Assembly: GCA_044892525.1 (NCBI GenBank)
Contig: CM097885.1
Span: 49,786,001 to 49,850,000 of the forward strand
Direction: 5' to 3'
From: Schmidtea polychroa
Lineage: Eukaryota
DNA length: 64,000 bases
How positions within the stretch are numbered: position 1 is the stretch's first letter; each line of letters starts with the position of its first letter. Below are positions 9,001-40,400 of this stretch, one piece after another. Below the pieces are notes generated by a model. The model made no database searches and was not told the DNA's origin. It saw nothing but the letters and a program-made list of their open reading frames with translations. The translations under genes were made by a program, and so were the position numbers.

Positions 9001-12000
9001 GAGCCCAGTTATGTATAAAATTGGAAAAGTTCCTTTCGGTGAAAATTCTATACGTGCTAAAAATCTTCTTCCGGGAAAAATATACAATTTCTGTGTTTCA
9101 GCGACAAACCAGTATGGAACTGGGGAATTATTAAAATCTGATGATTTCTCTATCGAAGAAGCTCATTTTGCTCCTGATGCTCCAGCTTGGGTAAAAGTAA
9201 TTGGAAAAGGCTCATCGAGTGTAACAATACAGTGGGTTATACCAAACGAATGCAAGCATGGACAAAAACACCAACACCATGTTGACAGTTATTTAATTTA
9301 TCAAAAAGAAGACAAACCTAATGCTCAATGGACTCACATAACTAATGTTGATCATTTTCTTGACAAAATAACGATTGGGAATTTATCTCCTGATAACAAA
9401 TATTATTTCGGAGTAGCTGGAGTAAACCAATATGGAATAGGAGATATTGTATCAACACTTGAACCGGTTTCGCCTGAATCAGTTACAAGTTAGTTTTCAG
9501 ATTATTTTTTTTATATTTAGAAACCGTTTTTAAATCTCATTTAATATTAGTTTATGATAAAGCTTAATACGCTCATTGTCACGTCATCCGTATATTTCAA
9601 ATACCACTAACTTCTATAGACGTCGCATCGAATATGTATGTTTGGCATCTATTCTTTTAGCCCGAGTCATGCTATTCATTAACATCAGTCAATCTGTGGT
9701 AATTTGTACTATCACATATTACTATATTAACCAATAATATGTTAATATTATATTAATCAAATTAGTCAATAATTTTCCTCATTCTGGGCTGCCAATCAAG
9801 ATGTTAACTAACACAGCGGTTCCTTAATCGTGGTCCGCGTCCCACTTTACTTTCCAGTAAGCCGCGAAACTAAATATTCTTTTAAAAAATTTGGGAGTGT
9901 TTAAAATGTTTAAAATAATTGTGACCTAAAATTAGAAAATCAAAAGATTTTATACCTAGTCACCGATGAAATTTTTTACTTATCCATAAACACGCACAAA
10001 TTGCGAAGCCTAATTTTATTTAGTGTCTGCGAAGAAAAAGGTTTAAGAACCGCTGAGCTAACATATTCTCAATAATTTCAATATTCGTAATATTTTAAAA
10101 ATTATTTTTTCCACTTCATTTTATGATCTTATAATCAATTTCTTTGTTTTATTTATTATTTATTTATTATTTATTTTAAATTTTCAGCTGTGCCAACTGC
10201 TCCCCAAGGACCACTTCAAATAAGTGATATAACTAAAACCAGTTGTGTTTTAGCCTGGAAAAGACCGATATTTGACGGAGGATCACCAATTATTACCTAT
10301 CGTATTTATAAACGAGAACATTTCAGAACAAGCTGGCAAGAAATTGGAAAAATACCCAACATAATTGGTCAACCTTTGGAGTTTAATGCGCTTTATTTAT
10401 TGGAAGGAACACAATTTGACTTTAGAGTCGTTGCAGAAAATAAAAACGGCTTTTCTGAACCTTTAGAAACTCAATTTTCTATCCAACCGAAAAAGTTATC
10501 TACTGTTCCGAACCAACCGAAAGGACCGATTAAAATTAAACCTTTTAATAAGGACAGTGTTAATGTTATGTGGAAGCCACCTGTAGATGATGGAGGGTCT
10601 CCAATAATTAATTATGAAGTCGAAGTCAAGAGACGAGGAAGGCCTTGGAAACCTTATCTAAAAACAGACGACACTGAATTTAATTTTACTGACATTTTAC
10701 CCAATGAAGAATACTTTTTTAGAGTATTTGCAAAGAATGCAAACGGATTAAGCAAACCTCTAATGAATGACGAAAGCTATGTTAAAATTGTAAAACCAGA
10801 GTCAATAAAAAACATCAAAGCTATAACAGAAAAACCAATTGGCGATCAAGTAATTTTATCTTGGATTCCCCCGTCGTCTAATGACGTTAAATCATACAAA
10901 ATTGAAAAGAAAAATCTGAGTTCTCCATATGATGATTGGCAGCCAATAGAATTCGATTTCAAACCGGAGCGGAAAGACAATACACAACCAATCAAATATA
11001 CAGCTAATAAACTATATCCAAATACTTATTATGATTTCCGGGTGTCAGCATTATATCCTGATGGCATTAGTGAATCGAAAAATTTATCAGCACCAATTCT
11101 AACTTCAAATCAATCTCCACTTGCACCTGTTAAAGATTTAAAGTTAAATATCAATAAAGACCATGATTTTATTGACTTAAAATGGGATCTTCCCGAGGAT
11201 TCGAGTTCTAAAGATCGACATGTTTTAATTGAAGAAAAGGATTATGATAATAATCGTTGGAGACCAATAGTTGATTTACCTGAATCACTAAGTTCTTTTA
11301 GTGTGCCCCGGTCTTCAGTGAAAGATAGAATACCGAGAGATTTTAAGTTAACAGTTTTTAATAAAACTGATGGGCTTAAGAGTATGCCAATGAATTTTAG
11401 ATTGCCCAAACTATATGGTGGGGATGATGACGACTATGAATATTTAAAGAGCAGAAATAATTTGCAATTTAAACCGGAAAATATAGAAAGAAACGATACA
11501 GACGGTTTTCGAAGACCAGAGTTCAAACCAAATAACTATCTTCCAGAAGGGGAATTTGATTTAAGATTGGGCGGACCTTCTTTGTTGGAGAAAGAATATA
11601 TTTACGGAAATTACGGTATACCACAAGCGGGCCGATTTTACTCAAAACCTACAGAAGTCATTGAATTTACTCGTAAAAATCTAAATCCTTTAGTTGTGAA
11701 ACCATTGACATCGGCAAGTTTAGAAGCTTCTTGGAATGATTATGTTCCTCCTAGGGATATCGATAAATTCAGAATTGAAAAATGGAATCCTGATCTTAAA
11801 CAATGGGAATATGAAAGTGAAGTTAAAGGCAATAAGAAAAATTATGTGATGTATGGATTGAATGCTGATGTTCCAGTTTGGTTGAGAGTAGTACCATATG
11901 ATAAATTTGGAAAAGCTCTTCCACCTTTATTAATGGATCGAGCAGTACAGCCTCAAATGAAACGTTCAAAACCATTGCCGGTCTCTAATGTGAGAGTGGA

Positions 12001-15000
12001 GCCAGAAGAATTTGGATTATTTGCCAGATGGTTCAAACCAGTAGATGACGGAGGATCACCAATACAAGGTTATAAAGTAACTCTTATAGACTTAACAACT
12101 GGAGAGGAAACAAATATTGCTGTAATTGATGCAAACCATAATGAATGTGTTCTTCCACAACTGAATCCTGATCATAATTGGGCTGTACAAGTAACGCCGT
12201 TCAATGCCGAAGGTTATGGTTCATCTACCAAATCTGGTCTCATAGATATTCCCAGGGAAGAGTTTGAATTACCTATTCAACCAATTAATATTTATCCATT
12301 AAAAATTTCTAAACCATTAAAAATGAAATGGGAAATGCCAGAAAATTATGTTTACAAGCCAGAGCAAACGTTTGTTCTAGAGAAATGGACATCAAAGACA
12401 AAGGATTGGGTACCTGTTGTTCACCTTCCTGGAAATATTCTGGAATATGACGTTCCAGACATTGATTTATCTATTGAAAATAGATTCAGAATATATTCTA
12501 ATAATCCTTATAAAATCAGTCAGCCGTTGTATTCAAATGTGATTTTACCGAGGTCAATAGGCAATATTGTTGCACCTGTTAATGTTAGACAATTAAACGA
12601 CATTGTAAACAAAAAAGTTGATTTAATATGGGAAACTCCATTTTATAATGTGCCACTAGATGAATACATTATTGAAAGACAAATACCTTCGAGATCTAAT
12701 GATTGGGAATATTTAACTTCCGTACCCAGCCACACCACCTCATTCAGTGTGAATTATCCAACTGAGGATGCAAAATATCGCATTTCCTCAATCATGGATT
12801 ACGGCAAAAGCGAGCCTACAGAAGCAGTGATAGATCTAAATTATGAACCGAAAAAGTGGATTTCTAAACCAATGACACCATTTAAATTAGAGATCCAACA
12901 TGGTGGAAAGTCATCGCCAAACTTAATGCCAGAAGTTTTGAATTTAAATATGCCTCATTATGTTCCGGATGATGTTGATTTCTATCAAATCGAAATGCGG
13001 CAACCGTCACAAAAAGAATGGTTTCCTATAACGAGAATAAGTCCTTTTGATACTTCCTACTCTATGGAAAATTTCAGTGAATATTCAATGCCAGAAGCTG
13101 TTTTCCGATTGAAGCCGATTAGCAAAACTAATAGAGATTACTTTGCAGAACCAACGGCTTATGTTGTACCTAGTTATACAGCAATGGAAAACTTTCCACG
13201 ACCAATTATGGCTGAACCATTGGATAATGGAGAAATTAATATACATTGGAGTGTGCCTAAAACGGGAATTTCTGATTTGCCCTTTAAGAAAATTTCATTA
13301 TATGAAAGAGAAGATTCTAGTCTTGATTGGAAAGAAATTGGCAGATTTAACTTACCTATTGACAAAGTTATTCTCACTGGTAGATCACAAAATCAGAAAT
13401 ATTTCTATGGGGTTGCCGATGTTACTGGAGATCGAATAGGCAGAATATCCAGTATTTTAGAGCCAATATCTAGTTATTATAAACCAGAAAATTTAGAAAT
13501 TAGACCGACTGTTTCATTAGGTCTGCGACCAATTAGTATGGATAAACCTATTGAGGTGTTTTGGGACAAACCATTGAATTTCGATATATTAGACAAAAGC
13601 AATTATTCCATAGACATGTACATTCCTGAAAATAACTACTGGATGAGTATAGGAAATATAATGCCCGAAATAACTAGTTTCCAGTTACCAAAGTACATTC
13701 CATGTACGCATGATACAAAATTAAGAATATCAAAGATTAATGATGAATGTAAATATATTCCTATCAGTAACTATGTACAATTACCCGATGATCTGATCAG
13801 GAAACCAATAAAAAGTGATTATGATACACCATATTTTATCAGTGACAATTATAAACCGAATGTTTATAATAATTCAGAGTGGAATCCTGATTATAAACTT
13901 GAAAACATAAACCTCAAGTTTCCATTACTTTTCAGCGGTTCCATTAAGCCCACTGATGATTACTTACATTATAGACTACCGTTAGAGTATGATATTCCAA
14001 CTTTGAGTGTAAAAGAAGCTTTTAATCATCATTTAATTCCAAGATCACCTATTGGTCCTCTTCAAGTCATTCCATTCGACGATAATCAGCTCGAATTAAC
14101 ATGGCAACCTTACAATTATCAATATGAAAAAATCCAAACCCCAACTTCTTATATTGTAGAATCTCGCCCAGTTGATTCACACGATACTTGGGTAACACAG
14201 GCTGAATTGGAGCCATATACATATAATGCTATCGTACCGAGACCGAACTTCGATTCGTATTACCGAATAAGATCCAGATTTGATGATATTTTCAGTGCAC
14301 CGTTAACTGAAATTTATCGGACTGATAGTTTAATGAAAAGGCCGACTTCCACTTATGTCACTTCGGTTATAAAGACAGAGTTTATTCCAAAATTTAACGC
14401 TATAGAATTGACGTGGCCCTCTCGAACTCGTTTTGGAGGTGATGAAATTGTTGATTATGCTGTGCAAATCAAATCAAATTATTCCCCATATTGGAGCACG
14501 ATTTCAATTTTGCCATCAAAAATTCAGAAATTTATTCATTATGACATAGAACCAGATACAGTCTACCAATTCCAACTAGTTCCTCGATTGAAAGGTGATA
14601 TTCCTGGTGCCTCTATTCCCAGTAATTACATCAGCATCCCATTTTATATGTTAAAACCCTATGTGAACATTGAGCAAACCAAGTCATCCGGTAGAAAACC
14701 GACTTTCACTGACTCAAAATTTATTGAAAAATGGATTCCTGATTCTGAAGAGTGGGTTTCGTTGAAATTCGATGAGAAACCTATGCCTAAAACTACCATG
14801 GAAAATGACTTACCATCATATTATCGGGTTCGAAATGAAATTATTCCAGATAGAATCGACAAATATTTTGTTAAATCCAAAACAGAAGGTAAAGATTATT
14901 TAAATATAATACGTTTAACATGATAATATTTCTATTTATTAATATTATAAGAACTTTTTTCAAATTTCACCACTGATTTCTTTTCAATTGGTATTGTATT

Positions 15001-18000
15001 TATTGAAAAGCTTGACTATGAATCGTAAATATATCGATGTTTTTTTCATATTCACAACTTTTCGTATTGCCTTTTTCAAGTGATTTTGATCGAATTCACT
15101 TGAAAAAGGCAGTGCCGAAAATTCGTGAATATCAAAAAAACATCGATAAAAATATAAAAGATTTTGTCATAGAATTTTTTTTTTAATAATAACTCATTTA
15201 TCAGAGTAGTAATTATTATTTATTAGTTAATGTTGACTCACACTTGATAAAGACGGCGCCGAAAATTTATGGTTATTCTTTGTTGTTTTTTATCTACCGC
15301 TATGTAATAACAAAAATTAAATTAGGTTATTGAATACATTTTGTATTTTGATTCTTTGCCACTTTTAATTTTGTTTCGCATTTTCTGCTATTCCATTCAT
15401 TATTTGTGAAAATGAACTTTGAACTTCCTAGCAATTAATTTTATTTTTCCTACTCACAATTCACAACTCAAAATAATTATTTCATAACTTTTCATATAAT
15501 TTAACATTTCTACTCACAAACTTAAAATTACTACAATTTTAGGGTTCATACTTGTATCTATCCATCCTTTTAGTCCGGGTGGTGTCCCTTGAATTTTAAC
15601 CTCAAATATTTGCCCAAATTATATATCTGTAAAGTATTAAAATAATAAATTTTAAATTTGATGTAATAAAACTAATTAGAATCCTTAGCGCACTCTTATT
15701 TTTTTTATACACAGACTGGTGGGAACTTTGTTGGCTGAAAAGAAACCGGTACAAAACTGTCTAGTGGATATATTCGGTTGTAATTATATATTAAATCAAA
15801 GTTCAAGCTTGCACTTATTAACTCGTGGTTCGGAAAAATTCGGTTCCTTGTACCCGAGTTAACGCGGTTAAGGGGTTGCATTTAATGAAAATATTATTTA
15901 TATGCTTCTGTAATATTTCATTATCCGAGCACTAAATTAATAAAAAGTGGGCTTTTAAGTGAAATTTAAAATAATATAGTTTTAAAATTGATTTTAATCT
16001 CACTATTTTTTTTATAGTAAAATCAATGCCTTTGGCTCCGTTAACTTTTACGGCTTATCGATCTCCAATAACTGAAGATGTCGTATTTGATTTTATTCCG
16101 TCTCTTTCGTGGAATACAAATGGTCCAGCAGTGAATTACAAAATCGAATATCGACCTCTTTCCGATACCCATTGGAAATATTTAACAGAAACTGACGCTA
16201 CCAATTACAGATTAGTTTACAAAGATCTGAAACCAGATGTCAATTATGAATTCAGAATATTCAGTGAAAATCTATACGGAAAAAGTGCTCCAGTAGAAAC
16301 AAGTTTACCAGCTAATTATAGTACAAGTAAAATATTTAATAAAAATATTTCAATTGAATTTATTGCTTAATTCAGAATTGATATTGAACAAAATCCCTGA
16401 AGATTCAGTAAGAATCGAGCCTATTCGTGATTCAGGATATCGACTCAAGTGGACTCCAATTGACATCTCATCTGTCACTGGTTATCGAATCGAAAAGTGC
16501 AATATTGACAAAGATTTTCAATGGCAGTTACTTGACACAGTGTCACCATATCAAGATTATTATCCTATCAATCATTTGGAACCTGAATTGAATTACAAAT
16601 TCCGCATCACTCCAGTATTCAATGAACTAATCGGTATTCCAACAACATATTCCAAACTGTTCAAGCCTGATGTTCGATTGCCTATCTTTAGACCAGAAAT
16701 TGAAACCTTGGAATTTAAACGACCAAGTGATGACAGCTTGTTAGTTTCGTGGACATTAAACAAATATAACTCACTGCCTGATGATATTGAATATTTAATT
16801 GACATAAGATATCCCAATGAATATTTATGGAATAATATTGCCACTGTTTTTAATAAGACTCACATCAAAATACCGAATATTTATTTCATAGAAAGAATTC
16901 CTTCAGAAATACGAATAGTTCCTAAAGTGTATGGTAAAAATTATGAGGCTTTTGTAGAGAAATTGCCTCAATCAATATGGATGGAAAGAGAAGATTATGG
17001 AAAAAGGCCATTAATTCCAAAATATTTCACTTACGCATTTTCATCGCTAACGTCATTGGCTATTAAATGGAAGCCAATCAAAATGAGTTGCGAAAGAATA
17101 CCGATTGATTATCAATATCATTATTTAATCGAAATGAAAAGTCCTAAATCAATTTCTTGGATACCAATTGGCACAGCCAACCCCTCTCTCGGTTACTTTT
17201 ACGTAAATAATCTCAGCCCGTCCATTGACTATGATATTCGAATAAGTCACCGAAATTCCGATGATAGACTGATTCCATCTGATTATATTTACCTAAATGT
17301 CATCCAAGATATTCCAACACAAACTGTTCAATTACCAATTATCCCCAACGAATTGCTCATAAAACCAACATTTGATGGTGTTGTACTAAAATGGAGTTCC
17401 AAAGAATGGGTTCCTGGAACAAGGTATGTAGTAGAAAAGGTAAATCGATCAATACCAGAAAGTATATGGGAACCAGTTACTAACTATCTGTTAGACGATT
17501 TTCAGATATTCATTCCTCGTGTGAATGAAAAAGATTATGACTTCAGAGTTATTGCAGTAAATAGTAGTAACGAGAAAAGTATTCCAAAATACGTTGATAC
17601 AGTGATTGAAATGTCGGACACTTTGGTACCAATTGCTAAACGAAAATATCTTCGTGATGTCATTCATTTTGATGAGACTGATTATATAATCAAATCTGGT
17701 AACGATGTCATTGTAACAGTATATTTCGAAAAAGATTATGGAATTGATGTTGAATGGTTTCACAATGGAGTGCATATTTATTCTGGAACGAAATATAAAA
17801 TCACTACTGACGTCTGTTGTAGTTCTCTTCGAATATTCAATGTATCATTATTCGATCAAGGATTTGTTAGCTGCCGAATTGTGAGTTCATTGGGTTATGA
17901 AATACGTCAACGAAAATTAATCATTGAAGTTATTCCGGGATTCGTGCGGAAATCTCAGATAATAACAGATTATACAATTTTATCAAAGGAAAACTTTCAA

Positions 18001-21000
18001 TTAAAGCTCCCAATTATGTATTCATTAACACCAAGAGTTGAAATTTATAAAGATGACCGCATTCTAGTCAATGATTACCGTATAAGGTGGACAATAATAG
18101 ATTATGTTTTATTTTTCTCTATCGACGACGTTTTACTTGAAGATCATGGATATTATAAAATCAAGATTTATAATAGTTTTGGATATGATTATTTTTCGTT
18201 CTTCCTCACAGTTGACGGTCAACCAAGGCAGCCTAAATATTCTCCGCTAGTAATAGAAAGTGATTATGTAATATTGATCGAGTGGCAATATGAATATCAT
18301 GATTTCATTACTCACTACGAAATAGAATTCCGCCATGAATATGGAGACTGGATTCGTATAGGAAAATCACTTACCAACAAATATGTAACAAATATTTTCT
18401 CGGATTTGTTCACAAATGTCGGTTGTTATCATTTCCGATATCGGGCAGTCAATAAACATGGAATCAGTGAACCGAGTCCAGCATCTGACGATTTAATTAT
18501 TCAAACTAGAAGGATTATTAGAGGTAAATAATTTTTATTGTTCTGTGAGTCTAGTGTATTTTGTGTAAACATATGATAATATTATCAACCATTCTACTTT
18601 TTTTAATAACAAACATTCAAATATTTGAGTGCAGCCAAATACTATTTTGACACCCTTAGTGAACATTTCGCCTTATTTAAAATCATTGATTAATTGAAGA
18701 CTTCAAATAAATTTTAAATAAAAAAGTATTTCATTCTTTATTTTTCTTTTTCGCCGATTCGAAAATTTTCTTTTCTATAGATTTGAAAAGTATTGGTTAT
18801 TTATGATTATTTTTAATTTCAGAAATGAGGGATGAAATGAAATTATCAAGGTACATATCAAAACATAATGAGTAGTATAGTTTTTCTAATTGAAAATTTT
18901 CTATTTCTTTTATCTTTATTTCATTTTTGAAAATAGGTCAGTATCTAGTTTTATATTTAGTACGGTTTTACCGCAGTACCGAAAGTCCATGTTAAATATG
19001 AAAAAATATATTGGTTTATAGTCTGAAATAAAATGATAGCAAGGAGAATTGAAAATGAAAATACAGTAGTGATCGGGTTTAACGTTAAAACCCGTTGGTT
19101 TGTTACGTAACTGATTATAACAAAATATTTTCAAATATTTTTTATTCATAAAATGAAGAATAGAACAAAAGATATAGAGGTTGGATACAAATCGAGTGAA
19201 ATATCCAGATAAGTTAAGTAAAAAAAATAAAAAATAAAGGTTTTGGAGAGCTATATGAAGATAAATTCAAAAGTAAAAAAATTGTTATAATCAAAAATGC
19301 TTTCATACCGGCGCGAACCGTTTTTTATGAAATTTAAATGAATTTCCATTTTTTTTCTTTCAATTCGTGACATTTTATATTACTGGAGAAGTTTTTATAG
19401 TGTATTTAATATTTGGTAGCCCACAGCGTGATTGCCCTTGTTGCACATGCGGATTGTGCGGTGCTGACAAATTTTTCATTTTAGGATTTGTATTGTGTTA
19501 AAATATCGTCTGTTATAAAGGTTTATTCTTGTAAAATTTAGTTAAAGATTTGGCTGATTGAAATCATATTGAAATTAACTGTCAAATTTGCTTAGAATTA
19601 TTTTTTTTGTTTGGGAAATTAAATAGTGTTATTTGTTGGTTTGTGTTATTGAATAAAAGAACACGCTACCGAAATCTATAAAACCCCAAGAGATCATAAA
19701 AAATTATATTTTAATTAATTGTGTTTATGTGAAGGGGCAAATGAAGAAGGAAAATGAAGCTGGGTATTTAATTTTTTTACATATTGGGGATATCTAATTT
19801 TCGCCAGTTCTATTTCAGCATTTATTTAAGTGAAATTATTTATTCAGAGCAAAAATCTATAAACGTACAAAATCTATATTATAAATTCAAACAAATACAC
19901 AATTTCAAAATATACCATTTGTAAAAAAAAGTTTATTTTAACTTTAAACACATACAACTGATTTTTTCTGGCACTCTCCATCGACTTTTTCACATTTAAC
20001 CGTACAAGTCGAGCAATGATGACCTCTGCAATGCTTGTAGATCAAACCTGGTCACATTGTCTCATCAATTCTGGCATGAGAATCATCCAAAAATTCCTCT
20101 AGATAAAAATAACAAATATTAATTAAAATTATGCTATGGACAAATTTTTTAATGTTTAAAATAGAAACAAAAATGTAAAAAAATAATTTCACAACAAAGC
20201 AGTTGATAATACTTCAGGAAAGCATCGCTGGTTATAACGAATATAATTGGTTAATCCCTAATTATCGTTATAACCAATCACCACTGTACATCAACGGTCA
20301 TAAAGATGAAAGATTTAATTTCTATTCTGAACCTATTAATTATATAAATAAATGTTGATAGTATCATTTTATAATTAAAAATTTCTTCATACATGCATTA
20401 ATTAATTTATTTTCAGATTATCGTCCCATTACCACGGAATTGTCCACTAAAATAAATAAATATGAGGAATTTGAGAGAGAATACGAAATTGTTGACATAA
20501 TATCAAAGTATAATTTACAATAAATATTCAACAAATTAATTTTATCGTAAATTTAGATTGTCCGATTCTACCGTTTATCAGGCCAGAAATAGAACATCGG
20601 GAAAGACTGTAATTACAGAAATAATTGACACTAAATCGTTAATAGAGAATGACTTGTATATCCATACAAGAAAATATTCAATAGAAAACAGCAAAAATAG
20701 ATACCTGGCTCAGTCGAATATAATCAAAGAAATCGAAAAACCAATTCGTGATTTGCCTGCAATCATTAATACAACGTTTCCAGCCAAAACGTTTTCAGGA
20801 CTTTATACTCCAGAAAAGGTTTACAGTTCCGAAAATCGTTCTGTTTTCATTTATCCTAGGTTAGATATGCAAAATTCCTTTTTTCAAAATTAACATTTTA
20901 TTTGTTAATTTATAATTTATTAAATTTTTATTTAATTAATAATAATAATTAATTAATATAATTAATTTTCAATGATTTTTATTCTACAAAATCAGACCTT

Positions 21001-24000
21001 TCTTTTATTTTACCACTTGCGCTGGAATGACTTGTTATTCATTTCTACTGCTATCTGTACCAAATGTTGACATGACGTGTATAGCTCGTGCGATCTTTGC
21101 TAAGTTGACAGTTCTACCAATAAGTTATTTATAATTTTATATAAAAAGATTTCAAATGGAAATTCGCTGTGATTTACTTTGGACGGGTTTGTCATTCGCG
21201 AACGTTAATTTATTGCCAGCGCAAGTGTTTAAATGTGAAAAATGGTTCATATCCAAATATAGAGAACTTTTAAGATAAAAGCAAATTATGTTCTGATATC
21301 AGAATTTAATATAATACCATTATATATTTATTTGACTTTATGTGTAGATTACTAAAACTCTATAAACCCTTCTTCCATGACTTTTTTTCCACCCTTCTAT
21401 TAGTTTATGTAGATTTTCTATTGAATATTGTATGCATTTTAATGGATTATTTATTATTTCACATTCTATTTTACATTTGAAATGAGTGATATCAGCAAGT
21501 GACCTAGTGTTTCGAAACTAATGAAAAATATAGTGAGAAGCATAGTACAAAGATGTTTCAATTCAGTATGAAATTTGTTTCTTGAATTCTCATTATAATT
21601 GATGAATTGCCTATGATTTAAATCATACCTGCACGACATACGGCCCGTGAACACTTTCTAGAACACTCCTAAAAAAAGTCAGAATAAGTTAATATATTTA
21701 ACAAATAAATCTAATCTATATGATATCAATGTGTGACGCGAACACACAGTCTTTACTATTAACTACCTATTCGGTCTCAACTATTTTCCTTCAAATTTCA
21801 GTCATACAAATTTAACATGTGTAAATATTATATGATTTTGAACAGGTATCATTTACAGTGATCCTACATTTACATTTGAAAATTCATAATTAAAACGAAA
21901 ATGTTTTCATTTAGTATCAGTGGGGAGAGTTTATATGAACCGATTGTTCGTCGAATTAAAATTTCAGAGGAAAAGATTGCTACGATAATCGAACAGATTC
22001 TAAAGACACTAAAAGACTTACATTCTGAAGGCATTGTTCATTTGGGAATTGAAGTAAAATATTGTCATTATTTTTTTCTTTATTTAAAAATCATTTCAGC
22101 CGAAAAACATTTTCTATTCATCATTGAAAAGTGACACTTCTATTAAATTATTACCGTCTCCAATCACTCGAAGGCTCCCATCTGAAAATACAGAAAGTTT
22201 CAAATTAAATCTGAGGAACTTGAGATATATTTCACCGGAGATAAAGTCAAAGCGGCCATTGAGCCAAGCAACAGACTTGTGGTCATTAGGAATGACAATT
22301 TATGAATTGTAAGCTATTTTCTTAATATTTCATTGGTTAATTTAAAAAAATAAGATTTAGTCTAGATGAGGGTCTTACATCAGAATCCATCTATCCAAAT
22401 GAATATAAGCCTGATATCTCAAGAATGAAAGGTGCCAGCTCTGAATTGATAGATTTCACTAGGAAGTTGTTATCATACAAACCCGAGGATCGGCCGTCTG
22501 TGGTTGCTGCACTGGAACATCCGTGGATCAAGACTATGTCAAAATATGAAGAAAACCGATCTTCTATTCAATATGATTTGTCTCCGCGTAAATTTGAAAT
22601 AGATTCTAAGGAATTTACGGCTCGAATAATGCATCTTCTTGGTGTCAAGTCGGTTTCATTACCGAAACCAGTACGCCGAAAATCTCAAACATTTGACGAC
22701 GATACGGAGGTTTTGTTGAAATCATATCCAAGGAGACCAAAGATTTTATCTCGATTGTCTGACATTTATGCATTAAGTGGTTCAAAGGTCGTTCTTCAAT
22801 GTCATTATGAGGTGGTAAATTGTAGCTATTATCAAGTTCGTTGGTTCTGTAATAACATCGAAATCACAGAACGACTGTCGAATAAATATTACCTTGACAA
22901 TTCAATTCGTGGATATAGTGTTCTAGAAATCCGATCTGTTGATGAAGAATCTGGTGGCATTTATTCGGTCAAAGTAATGAATGGAAACGGTTATGCTATT
23001 GACTCTTGCAATGTTGTCGTTAAACGTACAAGCCAAAAACGTTCACTGTCTTTCAAATATGATAATCCACCATTACCAACGATGGCTCCTGCTATCATTC
23101 TTCCATTATTCGATACAATTTCTGTCATTGGAAATTATATCATTCTCAATGCTAAAAGTAATATTTTATTTATCTTTTTCCTCTTTATTCGGCAATTCTA
23201 GTATCTGGTACATGTAAACCGGAAATAGTTTGGAAATTAAATGGAAAACTATTCAATCCTTTAACAACGGATCGCTATTCTATGACCCTTGACAATTTGA
23301 ATATTCATTTATTCATAGATCATTGTACAATGAAAGAAAGTGGATTATATACACTGGAAGTGTCTAACAAATACGGTTGCGATTCATGTTCAGCCTTGGT
23401 CAAAATTATAGGTAAGTATTACTTAGACTGTTGTACTTTCTGAAATATAAAACGAACCAAACAGTTTTCCATAAGAAAAATGTGTAATAAATCTCTCTGA
23501 CATACACAATGTATTTATATATTTGGGAACTATGGGAGCTACAAATTCTAGAATAACAGTTGTTTTTTTCTCTCGACACCAAAGATCGTACTTCTCTATC
23601 CAGATAACAAAAAAATGTTGACGTTATTTTTGTTGATAACCGTTCTCCTCACATGTTCCACATAACCCCAGCGCTCTTTATTATGCGAAATCCAATTTTT
23701 TGTGAAGGGGGTAAAAAATGCTTACATTATTTACAAAGAGAAATATAATAATAAAGTAATGTTGCGTCACAAGTTCATATTCACAATAATAAAAATTAAA
23801 GAACAAGATTGATTGAGAGAAAAAAACCGGAGTTCTGTAGTAACCAGTGAAGTTGTTTTAAAAGGTGTCTATTAAAACTCAACATTAAAACAAAAGATTT
23901 TCCTAGATGTTTTTATAATTTTGCTTTTATTTTAAAAAAAAAGTTAAAATATAATTTTATGTTTCAACAAACATCGCAATTTTTAAGGAAAGACATCAAT

Positions 24001-27000
24001 CGAGGAAATCTGAAAGAAAAAGTAAAATCTTTGATTAAAAATAATGAAATAAAAAATTTTTTATATATAATTAAATTTGTTTAAAATCCTTTATTTAATG
24101 AGTATTATATCCCACCTGATGATGACAGGAAAACTGTCGAAATTAATCGTGAAAAAAATGTTTGATTGGCGTTATCTTATAATTAAATCATTGCCATGTA
24201 TGTTTAACTATTTATTCAAAAATAATGAAGTAATTAAATTTATCGTCGAGTTTTGTTTTTTTATTCTAACAAATTGAACTGGAATATTCGATTTGATTTT
24301 TATTTCTTTAATTAAGTCTTTTGTTTGGTATTAAAATTTTAGGAAAGGTTTTCAGTGAGAGATCCTCTTGCTAATATCAGAAGTCATATAAGATGACAAT
24401 TTTAGCATTTTCCCTATTAATAGGGAAGTTTATGGAAATTGAAATGCTTTGAATAGTGAATAGAATCAAAATTTTCAAATATTTTAAAAATATTTTATTG
24501 AAAATTAACTTTTTCTCAGCCCCTTAACTCTGCAAAGAGCTCTCCTTGTGTCACACTAGTATAGAGGAATCTTATATTGCTATGAATGTCATTCATGCAA
24601 TTGTATATGTCCTTGATGACATAAGGAATCTATCCTTTACCTGCTGCTTGACCACTTGTTTCCCTTCCTATAAAATGAGTTCTTACAGTCAAATCTGTGC
24701 ATTTAAATCAACTGCTGACTGAACCTTCACTTTCATCATCAATGTTTATACTTTCAATGAAAACAATTGTTTTGTGTTCACTTACTTTACAATTTTCACT
24801 TATATTTCTTTGACTTCTTTTGTTAAAGGAATTTAAATGCGTCATTTTATTCGAATCAATTGAACTTGAATATTTGATTTGATTTTTATTTCTTTAGATA
24901 AATTACCAGATCCTTGCTGCATTCCGCCAAGGTTTGAAAAGCATTTACCGACAACCACAGTTGTAGATGGATCTGAAATCAAACTCCAGGTCTGTGTTAC
25001 AGGCATGCCATTGCCAGACATCCAATGGCTATTGAATAGATCTAAGGTTCCCGATATTGGAATGCGGCTTCATTTTGATGATATTACCGGATTATGTGAC
25101 TGTATTTTGGAAACTGACATTATTAGTGAAGATGTTGTCACAATATCATGTGTAGCAAAGAATATTATCGGCACAGTTATTACGGAAACTGATTTATTTA
25201 GAATAGGTAAACATAACCATATTTATTGTTTTAACTGTGGTATCAATATATCTTGTAGACCGGTCTCATATAATTCCCAGACTTTCTCTTGACAATAGTT
25301 TGCACAGACATCCTATTAAACGTACGCCAGAATTCACCAGAGTATTGAAGGATGTCCAAGCAGAAAGAGGATCAACCGTATCATTATTTTGTTCAACTAT
25401 TGGAACGCCTATTCCCGATATATATTGGCTCAAAAATGATAAGAAAATCGACATAACCAATTGTAANNNNNNNNNNNNNNNNNNNNNNNNNNNNNNNNNN
25501 NNNNNNNNNNNNNNNNNNNNNNNNNNNNNNNNNNNNNNNNNNNNNNNNNNNNNNNNNNNNNNNNNNNNNNNNNNNNNNNNNNNNNNNNNNNNNNNNNNNN
25601 NNNNNNNNNNNNNNNNNNNNNNNNNNNNNNNNNNNNNNNNNNNNNNNNNNNNNNNNNNNNNNNNNNNNAGAACTATAACGGTAGTGCTAAATTAGTAATA
25701 CATAACTTGGTTGTTGGAGATTTTGGAAAGTATACCGTTACAGCCTTTAATGATATTGGAAGGATTTCATCTTCTTGCTCTATCATTGAGATCGACACAA
25801 TTGACATAGCACCGCCGAAAATTTTGAGAGGAATTTGCAATATTACAATTGATGAAGGAAAATCGATAGAACTGGAAGTGGAAATAATTCCAAATCTATC
25901 AGTGGTAATAAAATGGTAAATAAATACTGCTTAAGATTTTGTGTAAATTTGTTTCATCCAGGGAAAAAGATGGAAGTGAAATCAACAACCGTTCACAAAA
26001 GAATTTGTCGATTTCTAATGTTTCGGATTCTATTTCATGTTTGCGAATTAGTAATAGTACAAAAGCAGACGAAGGCTTATATAGATGTATAGCAAGCAAC
26101 AAATTTGGTCATGCTCAAACATCCGGTTTCGTTTGGATTAATGAACCGATTAGAAGAAGGTCAATTGAAAAGGTTTCCGTCTCATCATCATATTTCCACA
26201 GCGAATCAATTGAGTCTCATAAGTCATTTCTAGTCAAAGAAAGTATTGAAGAAGACGAAACGGGAAATTATATTGAAATATTAGAATCATCTCCTTCGAC
26301 ACTTGAAGTCACTGAGGGCGAAGAAATTTCTTTGTTTTGCAAAGTGTCAACCAACTGCCGAATGATAGGTTTGTATTTTAGTACTATTAAGTGAAAGTTT
26401 ATCTGATTATCAATCTTATAGCTGAATGGAATAAAGGTAGTCGAACATTGGTCTATGATAAACGCCACAGAATCACTCAACAAAATAACATTTACCAAAT
26501 GGAAATTCCAAAATCTATTATCAATGATACTGGGAAATATGTACTGACATTAAAATCTGGATCAAAAGTAGCAACTATGATCTGTAGAGTAGATGTATTG
26601 TATAAATCCAAATCTTNNNNNNNNNNNNNNNNNNNNNNNNNNNNNNNNNNNNNNNNNNNNNNNNNNNNNNNNNNNNNNNNNNNNNNNNNNNNNNNNNNNN
26701 NNNNNNNNNNNNNNNNNNNNNNNNNNNNNNNNNNNNNNNNNNNNNNNNNNNNNNNNNNNNNNNNNNNNNNNNNNNNNNNNNNNNNNNNNNNNNNNNNNNN
26801 NNNNNNNNNNNNNNNNNNNNNNNNNNNNNNNNNNNNNNNNNNNNNNNNNNNNNNNNNNNNNNNNNNNNNNNNNNNNNNNNNNNNNNNNNNNNNNNNNNNN
26901 NNNNNNNNNNNNNNNNNNNNNNNNNNNNAGACAATATCTCGAGAATCATCAATTGTGTCTACAGACAGTTTTAGATCAAGATCATCATCAAGATTTTTAT

Positions 27001-27002
27001 AA
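1..27002 (+). CDS. Giant twitchin/titin-family Ig/Fn3 muscle protein with C-terminal pseudokinase (3' portion, multi-exon, 5' end outside window)
   Basis: Hand-spliced GT-AG exons that keep frame: <1-230, 453-717, 771-2813, 2861-3478, 3529-3643, 5679-5851, 5903-6511, 6561-6854, 6898-7017, ~7309-7910, 7959-9488, 10188-14888, 16018-16320/16326, 16376-18523, 20417-20507, 20557-20859, 21915-22053, 22100-22308, 22355/22361-23157, 23202-23411, 24898-25206, 25259-25466, 25669-25915, 25962-26368, 26422-26616, 26929-27002 (TAA). Repeated Fn3 motifs (LxWxxPxxDGGSPIxxYxVE...YxFRVxAxN) and I-set Ig motifs (WxKNG...DxGxYxCxxxN). Kinase fold followed by 6 Ig. Most module-separating introns are phase 1. Four N gaps hide some coding sequence. 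Confidence 0.93.
231..452. other. Assembly gap (N run); other gaps at 7055-7308, 25467-25668, 26617-26928, 55858-55997
   Basis: Runs of N seen directly; X-containing ORFs in the track are artefacts of these gaps. Confidence 1.
3960..5014 (-). mobile_element. hAT (Blackjack-type) transposon remnant in titin-like intron, interrupted by a second hAT
   Basis: After removing 4088-4779 and one TSD, the minus strand reads LPGTNALKERVFSIINNMWISDTSQLNIDILNAIVITKCNF (hAT C-terminal dimerisation region). Terminus TAGAGTGATCATTCGTCCCG (reverse complement of 4995-5014) resembles the Blackjack TIR TAGGGTGACCATACGTCCCG. A similar end starts near 5420. Confidence 0.7.
4088..4779 (+). mobile_element. Internally deleted hAT element carrying the transposase C-terminal dimerisation domain (ZMYM1-like clade)
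   Basis: TIR CAGGCCCG...CGGGCCTG; perfect 8-bp TSD GATGTATC (4080-4087, 4780-4787); ORF to 4623 with LTLPVSVPSGERSFSKLKQIKTYIRSTMSQERLVGLAILSIE. Confidence 0.9.
9814..10055. mobile_element. hAT MITE (Buster/Charlie-like ends), 242 bp
   Basis: CAGCGGTTCCTTAA...TTAAGAACCGCTG; 8-bp TSD AACTAACA/AGCTAACA (7/8). Confidence 0.8.
14944..15150. repeat. Fold-back (palindromic) dispersed repeat family, copy A
   Basis: Arms 15032-15083 and 15096-15148 are near-perfect reverse complements (TATCGATGTTTTTT..ATATTCAC...GCCTTTTTCAAGTGA). Related copies at 40712-40800, 42327-42390 and 55690-55850. Confidence 0.8.
19960..20286 (-). mobile_element. pogo/Tigger-like remnant
   Basis: End TCGTTATAACCAATCACCACTG followed by TA, with an inverted subterminal GGTTATAACGA; a minus-strand IDET-like motif near 20065. 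Confidence 0.4.
20417..22532 (+). other. Twitchin/titin-type kinase domain, predicted catalytically dead (5 exons)
   Basis: Spliced translation: YEIVDIISKLSDSTVYQARNRTSGKTVITEII...IEQILKTLKDLHSEGIVHLGIEPKNIFYSSLKSDTSIKLLPSP...YISPEI...TDLWSLGMTIYEL...FTRKLLSYKPEDRPSVVAALEHPW. Confidence 0.88.
21013..21228. mobile_element. piggyBac-like MITE, 216 bp
   Basis: TTTA-CCACTTGCGCTGG...CCAGCGCAAGTGT-TTAA; 12-bp inverted core with a degenerate TTAA site on the left. Confidence 0.6.
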
Positions 27003-37451: not shown

Positions 37452-40400
37452 TTAAATTGGAATAATTTGATGATCCAGTAAAACATCACGAATAACTTTA
37501 ATTGGCTGATAATTCTGGGAAAGGTGATTCAAATTTCCAATCATTATTAATTTATGTTTTGCCCGAGATATCGCTACATTCAATCGCCTCTGGTCATTGA
37601 GAATATTATAGGAATTCTATAAACATAAATTTGAAAAAAAATTGAATTAATTAATAGAATACATTTTCATGAGTTTTCCCCGGTTTATCAGATTGACTTA
37701 CAAATGATATTATGACAATTGATTTGTCCCTGCCTTGATATTGGTCGATTGTATTAATCTCTACTTCTAGGGGAGACATTATTTTCATCATTTCCTTTTG
37801 TTGATTGTATGGAATGATAACACCGATGTCAGATTCAAGAATACCGATCTGAAGATGTCCAAATAATTGCAAAATTAAAATTATCGCGAACAGACAATTG
37901 AAATGATTTTTATTTTTGAATTCTTATATTCGTCTTCAATTTTTCTGTGTTTATGTCAAAAATGAATCCATTTCAAAAAGATTTTTATCTTGAATTAATT
38001 TCAAAAATCAACCAAAGGAATTTGAATGTAGTTCTGAAGAAAAATAATTGCTATGTGAAGGAAAGCAGGAAGATAAAATAAAAAAACCCATATAAAATTC
38101 TCAGTTGTTAAAAATCAGTAGGCTTTTAAAAGATAACTTTCTTTAACTGTTTCAATTTAGAGAAATATTAAACAAGATGAAGTTTGTCAATGACTATTTT
38201 GTGTCCTCTTTGGAAAGACAATTTAATTAAATAATTAGAGCTCAATATACAATATAACAGTATAAATCGTTATAAAATGGTAAATGTGTTAGCCGATAAG
38301 TGAAACAATTTTTTCGACCCCTATATGAATGGGCGATTTATTTAGATAACTAAAGTTGTTTGCTTATACAGTATATTATTAGCGAGGGAGAGGCAGGTAA
38401 ATAATGTACTTAATGCAATAAGTAAACAAAACAGTGTAGCTTTATTACATAAAACCACAAATCAATCATTTGGAGGTCCCTGTTGACTGGTGCCGACCGT
38501 GCCATTGTTTTCTGAAGAAAATTAAGGAAACTTGGAAAAAAGGTCCCCTGTCTTGTGTACCCCTATGCATTGCTTACTCTTGCTATATTCTTTTTACTAT
38601 ATGGTAGCTACGCCACTGCCCATCATACACTGCATAGTAGCTTTTGACATCGCTACTATGAAAATCAAAACATTCTTATTAAGTGATTATCGTTGTATTA
38701 TTATCTAATGATAAAAAGTTACAGCGTTTAATAAAATAATCCTGCTCAATGCTTTTAAAAATATTCTCCCGGATTTTTAATACATTTTAAATAATAGTTA
38801 ATTTATAAAAATTAAATTCTTTGGAAATTTATTTAAGCAGCATTCTAAAATCTACCCAAAAAGATATACTCCCTCCGTCCGGTAATATGGTATACATTTC
38901 AACAAAAATCGTAGATTATCGTGAATATAAAAATAAATAGGCAACTGTCATGACATTTTCATAGTAAATATCCATGACAATATAACCTAAAATATTTGAC
39001 TTAAGTAATATTATTCTTAGTTAAAAACTTACCGCTCAAACATCAGTGTTTCTTGAGGTAGATACAATTAGTACCGCTGCAAGACGAATATGGAAAATGT
39101 GGAAGGAAATTTGTTAAATTTAGAAAGAAGAGAAGAGGAAATGGCTATAAAATACTTCATTTAAGTAAAGGAAAACTTCGTCGCGAAGGTCGACTGCTAG
39201 AAAAATATGTATGTTCTAAAGAAGCATACAATAAAGCCAAATCAAATTTCGAGTGAACTTAATAATATTAATATTTATTTTTTTAAATTTTATTTAATAT
39301 TTACATTAATATTTATTAAAATGTTTCAAATAAAGGTAATATAATAAACTTGTCATGTATATTTTTTGATTTATTTTATTTTTTCGCAAATGTATACCAT
39401 ATTTCCGGACGGAGGGAGTATCAAATTAAATTTAGAAATCGATATTTTGAAAGCCTGCTCTTTGCATGTTATAACGACATTTATTGGGTTTATTCAATCT
39501 ATCCGACATAGCATTGTATAAAAATGAATTGCGGTGGTCAAATAACCAATGATGTTTTTTAAACCTTTCCAACATTTTTATTCATTTATCAATCAAACTG
39601 TGATATTAAAACGTGTTTTATCAAGAGAAAACACTGGTAAACATTTGTGTATATTTTATTGTCGGTTCGATATTTAATTTCAGTGTAAGATTTGGGGGTT
39701 TCTTAAATTTACATGGAAAATAGTTAATTAATCAATAGTTAATTATACAATCAAAAATTTGAAATATAGCAAGGGTTTTTAAGTTAATTTTTTTTTCAAG
39801 GGTTCTCTTTATTCTTTTTACAGATGGTCGTCATTTAGTTCTTCTCGTAACGGGCGGATTTACACTCGATCTTTCTAATTTATCGATAGAAATGGGTCTA
39901 ATAGAAACACTGTAACTCTCGCGATAATTTTTCTCAGTGTCAATGTCAATTGAAATTATTTTTTGCAAATTCGAATTTAACATTTTTTTGATATTTTTTT
40001 TGATTTAATATTTTTTTTGGGTAGATTTTGAATTTAATAATTTTAATAGATTTTTAATTAAGCCCCTTTTTTTGGTATTTTTAAAATTTTCTCTTTACAG
40101 GGTTTATCAAAATATTTAAATTTGTTATTGCAATTAATTCTGAAGAGTAATCCATTGGAATATTTAAAAATTTTGATAGATCAACGATTAAAATTATAGT
40201 CAGTATTTTAGAAAAATTATCTAACATTTTTTTTACATTTAAATGAATGTAATTATTTTAATTTTTGTTATTCTAAAATAAAAACCAAAAGTTCAAGAAT
40301 TTAGAAAGAAATGAAAATTATAAATTAATATAAATACAATAAAATTAATGACTTTCAGAAGTTGTTCTAAGAGTTCCATTGCAATCCTAGCCTCAAATTT

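What the first reader, a model, noticed from the sequence alone, without database searches (positions are those of the whole stretch)
20417..22532. Twitchin/titin-position kinase has lost all catalytic motifs: a fully dead pseudokinase
Seen in the spliced translation: no Gly-rich loop (DIISKLSDSTV), beta3 Lys replaced by Glu (KTVITEII), catalytic Asp replaced by Gly (IVHLGIEPKN for HLDxKPEN), DFG replaced by LPS (IKLLPSP), plus an extra N-lobe insert. The C-lobe core (SPE, DLWSLG, RP, HPW) is kept and the frame is intact across 5 exons. Established: twitchin and projectin kinases are active; vertebrate titin kinase is atypical but keeps Lys and Asp; dead kinases are known in obscurin/UNC-89. 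Inference: a retained scaffold or mechanosensor fold without ATP binding, arising independently in an Fn3-rich twitchin/titin-like protein.
Basis: partly seen in the sequence, partly recalled or inferred. Interest (0 to 1): 0.75.

Follow-up and report, generated by a model that had tools for sequence, protein, structure and literature searches.

The report
Dead kinase in flatworm-type titin-like protein
A giant titin-like muscle gene of this animal carries a transcribed, correctly spliced kinase domain that has lost every residue needed for catalysis. Related species keep the domain, and a separate twitchin gene in the same genome has a normal kinase, so this is a new and extreme case of the known "pseudokinase in a giant muscle protein".

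Summary
RNA contigs from two studies confirm five GT..AG exons (20417-20507, 20557-20859, 21915-22053, 22100-22308, 22355-23157) joined in frame to the Fn3/Ig exons on both sides.

The product is a real kinase fold: 147.6 bits against a local CAMK profile, and Pfam Pkinase 73.8 bits on a close orthologue. All catalytic motifs are gone:
- Gly-loop reads SKLSDS.
- beta3 Lys is Glu.
- HRD reads HLG.
- Catalytic-loop Lys is Glu.

There is also an insert of about 31 residues in the N-lobe and a 7-residue deletion after helix F.

Two relatives keep the motifs their sequences cover (HLG, EPKN and PSP in both; beta3 Glu in the closer one, which also shows a degenerate Gly-loop). Identity is about 87% and 69%. 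Against the more distant one pS is 0.77 (saturated) and pN 0.16.

The best sequence and fold matches are titin and twitchin kinases. All four introns share position and phase with the genome's own twitchin kinase. That twitchin lies 200 Mb away and has every motif intact, so this gene is not the twitchin orthologue. It is a second giant gene laid out like titin or TTN-1: Glu-rich repeats, Fn3/Ig, Ig-Ig-Fn3, kinase, tail, then at least six Ig domains.

Most likely it is a nucleotide-free scaffold or mechanical module. Independent origin and orthology remain unresolved. Verdict: new variant of a known kind, moderate interest.

The parts
16354..18523 (+). Upstream exon of the same transcript: three Fn3, two I-set Ig and a last Fn3. 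The final Ig-Ig-Fn3 sits directly before the kinase linker.
   Evidence: Pfam fn3 and I-set hits. Collinear match to titin A168-A170, 2NZI. RNA contig joins 18523 to 20417.
18524..20416 (+). Intron of 1893 nt (GT..AG) with no kinase-like coding.
   Evidence: Joint in X1-X3 contigs. Junction resolved in frame. tblastn finds nothing kinase-like here.
20417..20507 (+). Kinase exon 1: N-terminal linker (contains YRP, as in the twitchin linker) and strand beta1 (YEIVDIISK).
   Evidence: beta1 aligns to the profile. The own-genome twitchin linker KYRPQPVEIK is seen.
20557..20859 (+). Kinase exon 2: degenerate Gly-loop (LSDSTV), beta3 with Glu in place of Lys (ITEII), a helix, a poorly conserved insert of about 31 residues, and beta4-beta5.
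   Evidence: No Pfam or PDB hit on its own. Insert is 56% identical to P0002 against 81-98% for the rest of the kinase domain. Low pLDDT at model residues 57-88.
20860..21914 (+). Intron of 1055 nt with no alternative kinase exon.
   Evidence: Joint 20859|21915. The only tblastn hit, at 21620-21718, has E 2.5 and an in-frame stop.
21915..22053 (+). Kinase exon 3: helices D and E, and the catalytic loop start HLG in place of HRD.
   Evidence: Pkinase 26.1 bits. Aligns to HRD of PAK, CaMK and other kinases. Conserved in L001 and P0002.
22100..22308 (+). Kinase exon 4: EPKN (catalytic-loop Lys->Glu, Asn kept), LLPSP (DFG->PSP), activation segment, SPE, and DLWSLG of helix F.
   Evidence: Pkinase 24.5 bits. 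Aligned to titin kinase 1TKI and twitchin. Conserved in L001 and P0002.
22355..22532 (+). First part of exon 5: rest of the C-lobe (helices G to I, DRPS, HPWIK), with a 7-residue deletion after helix F.
   Evidence: RNA joint 22308|22355. Pkinase profile positions 221-263.. pN 0.12, pS 0.69 against L001.
22533..22730 (+). Tail of about 65 residues between the kinase and the next Ig, in the position of the titin/twitchin C-terminal regulatory tail.
   Evidence: 92% identical to P0002. pN 0.25 against L001. The model has helix-helix-strand, but pLDDT is 35-60. Fold alignments to 1TKI and 3UTO run through it.
22731..23157 (+). I-set Ig domain directly after the tail; end of exon 5.
   Evidence: I-set 33.1 bits. 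Joint 23157|23202.
23202..27002 (+). Further Ig-coding exons of the same gene. The extent is approximate and interrupted by N runs.
   Evidence: I-set hits at 24879-25289, 25707-25916 and 25939-26391. The RNA contig continues past 23400. P0002 has six I-set domains after the kinase.
58..16370 (+). Upstream Fn3-dominated part of the same giant gene (Fn3 with interspersed I-set, including one 1577-codon exon).
   Evidence: ORFs. Pfam fn3 and I-set hits. The 10 kb before the window hold a Glu-rich repeat ORF of more than 2300 codons followed by Ig/Fn3.

Best explanation
The stretch encodes the kinase-like domain of a giant titin/TTN-1-like muscle protein. The protein's layout is Glu-rich repeat region, long Fn3/Ig region, Ig-Ig-Fn3, linker, kinase fold, tail of about 65 residues, then at least six Ig domains.

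The domain keeps the protein-kinase fold, above all the C-lobe. It has lost the Gly-rich loop, the beta3 Lys, the catalytic Asp and Lys, and the whole DFG triplet. It therefore very probably neither transfers phosphate nor binds ATP and Mg in the usual way.

It is maintained by selection as a structural part of the filament. The likely roles are a docking platform and/or a force-bearing, force-sensing module with its flanking tails, as proposed for vertebrate titin kinase. Catalytic signalling of this type is left to the separate twitchin gene, whose kinase is fully canonical.

Shown here: exon structure, transcription, motif loss, kinase fold, conservation, domain context, and the intact twitchin paralogue. 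Inferred: no nucleotide binding, and a scaffold or mechanical role.
For: - Splicing and transcription. Open frame.
- Kinase homology: 147.6 bits to a canonical CAMK-like profile; Pfam Pkinase 73.8 bits on orthologue P0002 against a cut-off of 31.7.
- Motif replacements by alignment.
- Conservation: the orthologue P0002 (87% identity) keeps ITE/TEII, HLG and LLPSP. L001 (69% identity over exon 5, 83% and 62% over exons 3 and 4) keeps HLGIE, EPKN and LLPSP.
- Selection: pS 0.77 (saturated) against pN 0.16 for the kinase exons. This is no faster than the neighbouring Ig (pN 0.16).
- Regional identity to P0002: 81-98% outside the insert, against 90% for the neighbouring Ig.
- Sequence matches: best PDB hits are twitchin 1KOA at 70.7 bits and titin 1TKI/4JNW at 70.5, ahead of CaMK1 at about 62 and DAPK at about 57.
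- Fold matches: best Foldseek hits are titin kinase 6YGN/4JNW/1TKI, twitchin 3UTO and medaka titin kinase. VIA-align gives Z 26.0 and 25.8 for titin kinase against a plateau near 24.
- Context: Ig-Ig-Fn3 before and Ig after the kinase.
- Gene structure: all four introns share position and phase with the own-genome twitchin kinase.
- Intact twitchin at C1:252.49 Mb with GxGAFG, VAK, HLDLKPEN, DFG and APE. Its N-lobe exon scores 93 bits to Aplysia twitchin.
- The dead-kinase gene is single copy.
Against: - There is no biochemical test, and some pseudokinases with degraded motifs still bind nucleotide or catalyse other reactions.
- N-lobe conservation is seen only in one close relative (P0002). 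The more distant contig L001 stops at exon 3.
- The structure model is of P0002, which lacks beta1 and carries a 7-residue gene-model insertion. The model is only moderately confident (pLDDT 69.5) and weak in the tail, so docking of the tail is not shown.
- The margin of titin and twitchin over other CAMK kinases is small (about 8 bits, about 1.5 Z).
- Contigs cannot exclude rare isoforms.
Confidence: 0.72

Rival explanations
1. The domain is a relic on its way out. It is kept only as an inert spacer in a very long protein, with no function specific to the kinase fold.
For: All catalytic motifs are gone. The N-lobe is unrecognisable on its own. There is a fast-evolving insert (56% identity to P0002) and a very long branch (2.16 substitutions per site).
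Against: The frame is intact across five exons and in two other species. The kinase exons change no faster than the flanking Ig domain (pN 0.16 for both) while pS is saturated. Structural anchors of the C-lobe (SPE, DLWSLG, Arg, HPW) are kept. Exon 3 is 98% and exon 4 is 93% identical to P0002.
Confidence: 0.1
2. It is an atypical but active enzyme or nucleotide binder, as CASK, WNK or SelO-type pseudokinases turned out to be. It would use other residues in place of the canonical ones.
For: The remodelled active-site residues (HLG, EPKN, LLPSP) are themselves conserved across species. Drosophila obscurin PK1, with the same Asp->Gly change, binds ATP tightly (PMC10129394). The catalytic-loop Asn is kept.
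Against: Obscurin PK1 keeps GxGxxG, AAK and DFG; here all three are lost together, with two prolines in place of DFG and no glycine left in the phosphate-binding loop. The regulatory-spine Phe of DFG is replaced by Ser.
Confidence: 0.1
3. It is the orthologue of obscurin/UNC-89 PK1, a known pseudokinase, not a titin/twitchin-type kinase.
For: It shares the Asp->Gly change of the catalytic loop with arthropod obscurin PK1. The tree cannot fix its place.
Against: No obscurin entry is among the 60 best sequence hits or the 50 best fold hits shown, whereas titin and twitchin lead both lists. There is no second kinase in the 650 residues after it (six Ig in P0002) or elsewhere in the window. Upstream is Fn3-dominated, unlike the Ig-rich obscurins. 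The linker has the twitchin-like YRP, and a tail plus Ig follows. No named obscurin sequence could be put in the tree.
Confidence: 0.05
4. The dead motifs are an artefact of the gene model or assembly, and the real transcript carries a normal kinase.
For: The window has N runs.
Against: Contigs of three runs from two studies show exactly these joints. There are no N runs inside 20417-23157. Two other species encode the same replacements. No alternative kinase-like exon lies in the introns.
Confidence: 0.03

Closest known systems
Vertebrate titin kinase (TK; 1TKI, 4JNW, 6YGN, medaka 9QJ2)
   Same: Kinase fold set near the C-terminal end of a giant Ig/Fn3 filament, between Ig-Ig-Fn3 and Ig and flanked by tails. 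It is regarded as a pseudokinase scaffold and mechanosensor (PMC4042850, PMC12862963). It is the best fold match (Z 26.0; Foldseek E 7e-19) and ties for best sequence match (70.5 bits).
   Different: TK keeps the Gly-loop, the Lys (as MAK), the catalytic Asp and E-F-G. Here all are lost (SKLSDS, ITE, HLG, PSP). The TK tail motif [R/K]H[R/K]RYY is not seen in this tail. Sequence identity is only about 24%. Orthology is unresolved.
Twitchin kinase (C. elegans 1KOA/3UTO, Aplysia 1KOB) and this genome's own twitchin (C1:252.49 Mb)
   Same: Same domain context. Top PDB sequence hit (70.7 bits). The linker shares YRP. All four introns of the dead domain share position and phase with the own-genome twitchin kinase.
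   Different: Twitchin kinase is catalytically active and fully canonical, in this genome too. The dead domain scores only 50.8 bits against it. The dead-kinase gene also has a huge Glu-rich repeat region that is not known in twitchin (my own knowledge for the last point).
Drosophila/arthropod obscurin PK1 and C. elegans UNC-89 PK1
   Same: Pseudokinases of giant muscle proteins with a scaffold role. Arthropod PK1 has the same Asp->Gly change in the catalytic loop (PMC10129394).
   Different: PK1 keeps GxGxxG, AAK and DFG and binds ATP. It lacks a true C-terminal regulatory tail, and a long disordered linker and a second kinase follow it. None of these features is seen here.
Amphioxus titin-like giant protein kinase (XP_002597967, as cited in PMC3114093)
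   Same: An invertebrate titin-position kinase reported as inactive through loss of the catalytic Asp.
   Different: A single replacement (Asp->His) is reported there. Here every catalytic motif is replaced. I did not examine that sequence.
C. elegans TTN-1
   Same: An invertebrate titin-like giant with long charged repeat 'spring' regions, Ig/Fn3 domains and one kinase near the C-terminus (my own knowledge). This is the overall layout seen here.
   Different: The TTN-1 kinase is reported to be active (my own knowledge, not checked here). No TTN-1 sequence was available to the tools, so orthology is untested.

Membership tests
Protein kinase-like fold (Pfam PF00069 Pkinase) | Significant match to the Pkinase profile above the curated cut-off | tested here: met
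   P0002 (87% identical orthologue) scores 73.8 bits against a cut-off of 31.7, covering profile positions 65-263 only. Window exons 3, 4 and 5 score 26.1, 24.5 and 21.1 bits separately. The spliced window protein scores 147.6 bits against a local CAMK-like profile. The AlphaFold model is a bilobal kinase, Z about 24-26 to many kinases.
Catalytically competent eukaryotic protein kinase | GxGxxG loop, beta3 Lys, HRD Asp, DFG Asp | tested here: not met
   The corresponding residues are SKLSDS, Glu, Gly and Pro. The same holds in the relatives for the parts available.
Titin/twitchin-type sarcomeric kinases (MLCK branch of CAMK) | Embedded in a giant Ig/Fn3 protein as Ig-Ig-Fn3 - linker - kinase - regulatory tail - Ig | tested here: met
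   Pfam hits on the flanking exons. Collinear match to titin A168-A170, 2NZI. One RNA contig spans all of it.
Titin/twitchin-type sarcomeric kinases (MLCK branch of CAMK) | Closest in sequence and fold to titin and twitchin kinases | tested here: met
   They are the top five PDB sequence hits, the top six Foldseek hits and the top four VIA-align hits. The margins are small: about 8 bits and about 1.5 Z.
Titin/twitchin-type sarcomeric kinases (MLCK branch of CAMK) | Forms a clade with titin and twitchin kinases in a tree | tested here: inconclusive
   The clade with the own-genome twitchin and two titin-kinase-like domains is recovered but weak (56/84.8). Grouping with PKD is not rejected (p-AU 0.21). 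No named TTN-1, projectin, obscurin or MLCK sequences were available.
Titin/twitchin-type sarcomeric kinases (MLCK branch of CAMK) | C-terminal tail (helix R1, helix R2, strand R1) packed into the active site | tested here: inconclusive
   The model has helices 292-304 and 320-330 and strand 354-359, and alignments to 1TKI and 3UTO run to residues 361-365. However pLDDT there is 35-60, and the input alignment held titin-kinase-like and twitchin tails.
Titin/twitchin-type sarcomeric kinases (MLCK branch of CAMK) | Gene structure shared with a bona fide family member | tested here: met
   Four of four introns share position and phase (2, 2, 0, 2) with the own-genome twitchin kinase. An MLCK-like locus (L018) shares two exon borders. 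CaMK-like loci L019 and L021 have no intron at HRDLK|PEN.
Vertebrate titin pseudokinase signature (PMC12862963) | Bulky-x-K (MAK), EFG, and the [R/K]H[R/K]RYY motif in the tail | tested here: not met
   ITE, PSP, and no RHKRYY-like motif in the tail. The motifs are present in the titin-kinase-like control P0009.
Obscurin/UNC-89 PK1 pseudokinase | First of two kinases separated by a long disordered linker; keeps GxGxxG, AAK and DFG; no regulatory tail | tested here: not met
   There is no second kinase in the window or in the 650 residues after the domain in P0002. The ATP motifs are lost. Only the Asp->Gly change is shared.
Twitchin orthologue | Highest similarity to twitchins, and the only such gene in the genome | tested here: not met
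   A different locus (C1:252.49 Mb) scores 93 bits to Aplysia twitchin for one 68-residue exon and is canonical. The dead N-lobe exon matches nothing.

The most novel reading that the evidence does not exclude
This would be the spiralian counterpart of titin/TTN-1, in an animal whose muscle is not classically striated. Its kinase would have become a nucleotide-free, purely mechanical or scaffolding module, kept by selection long after every catalytic residue was lost, while a separate twitchin retains catalysis. That would be a natural separation of the scaffold and enzyme roles of sarcomeric giant kinases. It would also be independent evidence that the conserved job of the titin-position kinase fold is non-catalytic. 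A possible charge swap, in which the beta3 Glu pairs with an Arg or Lys of the following helix (HTRKYS, conserved in P0002), could hold the N-lobe together without ATP.
Probability: 0.4. Interest if true: 0.6.

Novelty: new variant of a known kind. Interest (0 to 1): 0.45.

Why it matters
Whether the kinases built into titin-like filaments act as enzymes or as force-sensing scaffolds is a long-running question. Vertebrate titin kinase is now seen as a pseudokinase, but it keeps most of its catalytic residues, so the debate continues.

Here the titin-position domain has lost all of them and is still conserved, expressed and framed by the usual tails and Ig/Fn3 domains. A normal twitchin kinase sits elsewhere in the same genome. 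If the animal is a planarian (an inference from genome size, four chromosome-scale contigs and 30% GC), RNAi and regeneration assays would make the non-catalytic role directly testable.

The finding also warns annotators that the N-lobe of this domain is invisible to Pfam.

Tried and rejected
- The search for homologous proteins with the exon 2 ORF found nothing.
- With P0002 residues 1-365 it found only PKD, CDPK-like and other generic kinases, because of the length window and the word index. No named titin, TTN-1, projectin, obscurin or MLCK sequences could therefore be brought into the tree.
- The exhaustive phmmer of the C-lobe plus tail (125 residues) against 1.84 billion representatives gave only two true relatives (P0002, P0001). 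The other 16 hits were generic kinases at 36-44 bits. The age of the loss beyond close relatives could not be set.
- The look-up of encoding contigs has no record for P0002.
- Searching the genome with the dead exon 4 did not pick out twitchin above noise (E 5.27).
- Alignment A1 misplaced the window's exon 1 and 2 fragments, so it was replaced by A2 for folding.
- The ESM Atlas feature search gave only generic kinase clusters.
- AFDB Swiss-Prot gave CASK and CaMKII first. My reading (own knowledge) is that giant proteins such as titin are not modelled there.
- The 7 extra residues KSLISFQ in P0002 at the exon 3/4 junction match the 3' end of the intron. In this genome that stretch has an in-frame TAA and is spliced out, so I treat it as a gene-model artefact.
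- NG86 dS could not be computed because synonymous sites are saturated, so pS and pN are reported instead.
- The spliced window protein could not be passed to the fold or database tools because it has no reference. P0002 was used in its place.

Full report
**What is there.** The window (30% GC) carries on its + strand one very long gene made of Fn3 and I-set Ig domains. I laid contigs of three runs from two studies on 18000-23400. The tool guesses they are RNA, and they lack the introns. They show these joints: 18523|20417, 20507|20557, 20859|21915, 22053|22100, 22308|22355 and 23157|23202. All are GT..AG, and none appears in the DNA run. One contig of 13 kb runs through the whole region.

The joined sequence is open from 16354 to 23400. 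The five-exon kinase-like domain is therefore real, transcribed and part of the giant transcript. Exon 5 begins at 22355.

**Is it a kinase, and are the motifs gone?** Taken singly, exons 3, 4 and 5 match Pfam Pkinase at 26.1, 24.5 and 21.1 bits. Exons 1 and 2 (the N-lobe) match nothing in Pfam or the PDB. The spliced protein scores 147.6 bits against it, 13.4 bits over beta1-beta3 and 132.1 bits from beta4 to the end.

That alignment, together with the PDB alignments, gives this map:
- GxGxxG -> SKLSDS
- beta3 Lys -> Glu (ITE)
- HRD -> HLG
- catalytic-loop Lys -> Glu, with the Asn kept (IEPKN)
- APE -> SPE
- DLWSLG, the Arg of DRPS, and HPW are kept

About 31 residues are inserted between beta3/helix C and beta4. 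Seven residues, including the usual PF motif, are missing after helix F. tblastn with five kinase queries finds no other kinase-like piece in the window. The one weak hit in the large intron (E 2.5) has an in-frame stop.

**Conservation.** Two relatives were found.
- P0001/L001 is a 1.7-kb genomic contig of another species. It is 69% identical over exon 5 and has 37% GC. It carries exons 3 to 5 with the same intron positions and keeps HLGIE, EPKN and LLPSP.
- P0002 is a 1006-residue protein, 87% identical. It runs from exon 2 onward and keeps TEII, HLG and LLPSP. It has six I-set domains after the kinase and passes the Pfam Pkinase cut-off (73.8 bits, profile positions 65-263).

Against L001, synonymous sites are saturated (pS 0.77) while pN is 0.16 for the kinase exons. 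This equals the neighbouring Ig (pN 0.16), and the tail is at 0.25. Against P0002, the kinase domain outside the insert is 81-98% identical, the insert 56%, the tail 92% and the Ig 90%. The domain is under purifying selection, and the replaced active-site residues are themselves stable. In this genome it is single copy.

**Which kind of kinase.**
- Sequence: with P0002:1-365, the best PDB hits are twitchin (1KOA, 70.7 bits), titin kinase (4JNW and 1TKI, 70.5), 3UTO and 6YGN. A calmodulin-domain (CDPK-type) kinase and CaMK1 follow at about 62 and DAPK at about 57.
- Fold: an AlphaFold model of P0002:1-365 (41-row alignment, pTM 0.74, pLDDT 69.5) is a bilobal kinase. It has low confidence in the insert, at a 7-residue gene-model artefact and in the tail. 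Foldseek ranks titin kinase, twitchin kinase and medaka titin kinase first. VIA-align gives Z 26.0 and 25.8 for titin kinase and 24.5 for twitchin, against a plateau near 24. Only these alignments run on through the tail.
- Context: the domains before the kinase are Ig-Ig-Fn3, collinear with titin A168-A170. The linker contains YRP, as in the twitchin linker.
- Gene structure: all four introns inside the domain share position and phase with those of this genome's twitchin kinase. An MLCK-like locus shares two of the borders, and CaMK-like loci do not.
- Tree: the dead pair sits on a stem of 2.16 substitutions per site. It groups with twitchin and two titin-kinase-like domains at only 56/84.8 support, and a grouping with PKD is not rejected (p-AU 0.21).

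Membership of the titin/twitchin/MLCK branch is thus supported by context, best matches and gene structure. It is not proven by phylogeny.

**Not the twitchin orthologue.** At C1:252.49 Mb on the minus strand I found kinase exons with GxGAFG, VAKF, HLDLKPEN, DFG and APE. They are preceded by regular Fn3-Fn3-Ig exons and a linker with a YD motif, and followed by Ig. The N-lobe exon scores 93 bits to Aplysia twitchin. A partial identical copy lies at 252.15 Mb.

The gene in the window is therefore a second giant. The 10 kb before the window hold an open frame of more than 2300 codons of Glu-rich repeats with no Pfam family, then Ig and Fn3. The overall layout is charged repeat region, Fn3/Ig region, kinase, Ig. 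This is that of titin or nematode TTN-1 (the latter comparison is from my own knowledge).

**How it most likely works.** There is no glycine in the phosphate loop, an acidic residue in place of the ATP-anchoring Lys, and Pro-Ser-Pro in place of DFG. That also removes the regulatory-spine Phe. ATP/Mg binding and phosphotransfer are therefore very unlikely; this is inference.

What is kept is what holds the C-lobe together (the SPE-Arg pair, the helix F Asp, HPW), together with the flanking linker and tail. The best reading is a fold kept as a docking surface and/or a force-bearing, force-sensing element of the filament. This matches the proposal for vertebrate titin kinase (PMC4042850, PMC12862963). 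In this genome, the twitchin gene's kinase keeps every catalytic motif.

**Rivals.**
- An inert relic: argued against by selection.
- An atypical enzyme or nucleotide binder: the remodelled site is conserved, and Drosophila obscurin PK1 with the same Asp->Gly change binds ATP. However, that domain keeps GxGxxG, AAK and DFG (PMC10129394).
- An obscurin/UNC-89 PK1 orthologue: there is no second kinase, the upstream is Fn3-rich, a tail plus Ig follows, and no obscurin entry is among the listed best hits.
- An artefact: refuted by RNA and by two other species.

**Novelty.** Pseudokinases in giant muscle proteins are known: titin kinase, obscurin/UNC-89 PK1, and an amphioxus titin-like kinase lacking the catalytic Asp (PMC3114093). 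My paper searches found none that describes a flatworm titin-like dead kinase.

This is a new and more extreme variant, with every catalytic motif lost, in a titin-position domain. It sits beside an intact twitchin in an animal that is probably a planarian. That last point is an inference from a 781-Mb genome in which the search hits fell on four very large contigs (one is 272 Mb), 30% GC, and the best twitchin match being a mollusc's. It was not verified.

**Limits.**
- No biochemistry was done.
- N-lobe conservation is known from one close relative only.
- The model is of P0002, not of the exact spliced protein.
- Orthology and the age of the loss are open.
- Contigs cannot exclude rare isoforms.

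Noticed in passing
L014 (G000:C1:252484000-252493999, minus strand) and L033: A canonical twitchin gene. Its kinase exons carry all catalytic motifs, with Fn3-Fn3-Ig exons upstream, a linker with a YD motif, and Ig exons downstream. The N-lobe exon scores 93 bits to Aplysia twitchin.
   Followed up: yes
L015 (G000:C1:252144500-252154499, plus strand, about 6768-7734): A second copy of four twitchin kinase exons (N-lobe to helix G), identical or nearly so to the complete gene; the exon 4 equivalent is 100% identical. It lies about 340 kb from the complete gene, next to a 200-codon ORF rich in Pro, Ser and Thr. No exon for the end of the C-lobe is seen. It may be a segmental duplication, a pseudogene fragment or an assembly duplicate.
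   Followed up: partly
L034:2-6958 (G000:C1:49776002-49782958, the 10 kb before the window): An open frame of more than 2300 codons made of long Glu-rich repeats with no Pfam family, followed by Ig and Fn3 exons on the same strand. It is probably a spring-like region of the same giant gene.
   Followed up: partly
L014:44-2079 (minus strand): About 2 kb open in all three frames, made of a short tandem repeat (peptide reading ...YKCSYTNAHIQMLI...), downstream of the twitchin Ig exons. It is probably a minisatellite and not coding.
   Followed up: no
window 22170-23068: The RNA contigs differ from the genome at ten places in exons 4 and 5. Five are synonymous and five are not (R202Q, R217K, R355L, Y483D, P486L in my numbering of the spliced piece). 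All three runs show the same differences, so this is probably strain variation and not editing.
   Followed up: partly
window 59721-61679 (minus strand): An intact 652-codon ORF. From its sequence I judge it to be a hAT/BED-type transposase. This was not searched.
   Followed up: no
window 56110-56796 and 37651-37872 (minus strand): ORFs that may be exons of a helicase/nuclease-type gene on the opposite strand, downstream of the giant gene. They were not searched.
   Followed up: no
P0009 (706 residues, from the representatives search): A protein with two tandem kinase domains. Both carry titin-kinase hallmarks (MAK, E-x-G in place of DFG); the RHKRYY tail motif is seen after the second domain. 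This looks like a fish-type titin kinase duplicated in one model. I used it only as a titin-kinase-like reference.
   Followed up: partly
L018 (G000:C3:70421498-70424704): An MLCK-like kinase exon (PENILCL...IIDFG...) with the same exon borders as the twitchin and dead-kinase exon 4. Its flanks were not examined, so it could belong to an MLCK or an obscurin/SPEG-like gene.
   Followed up: no
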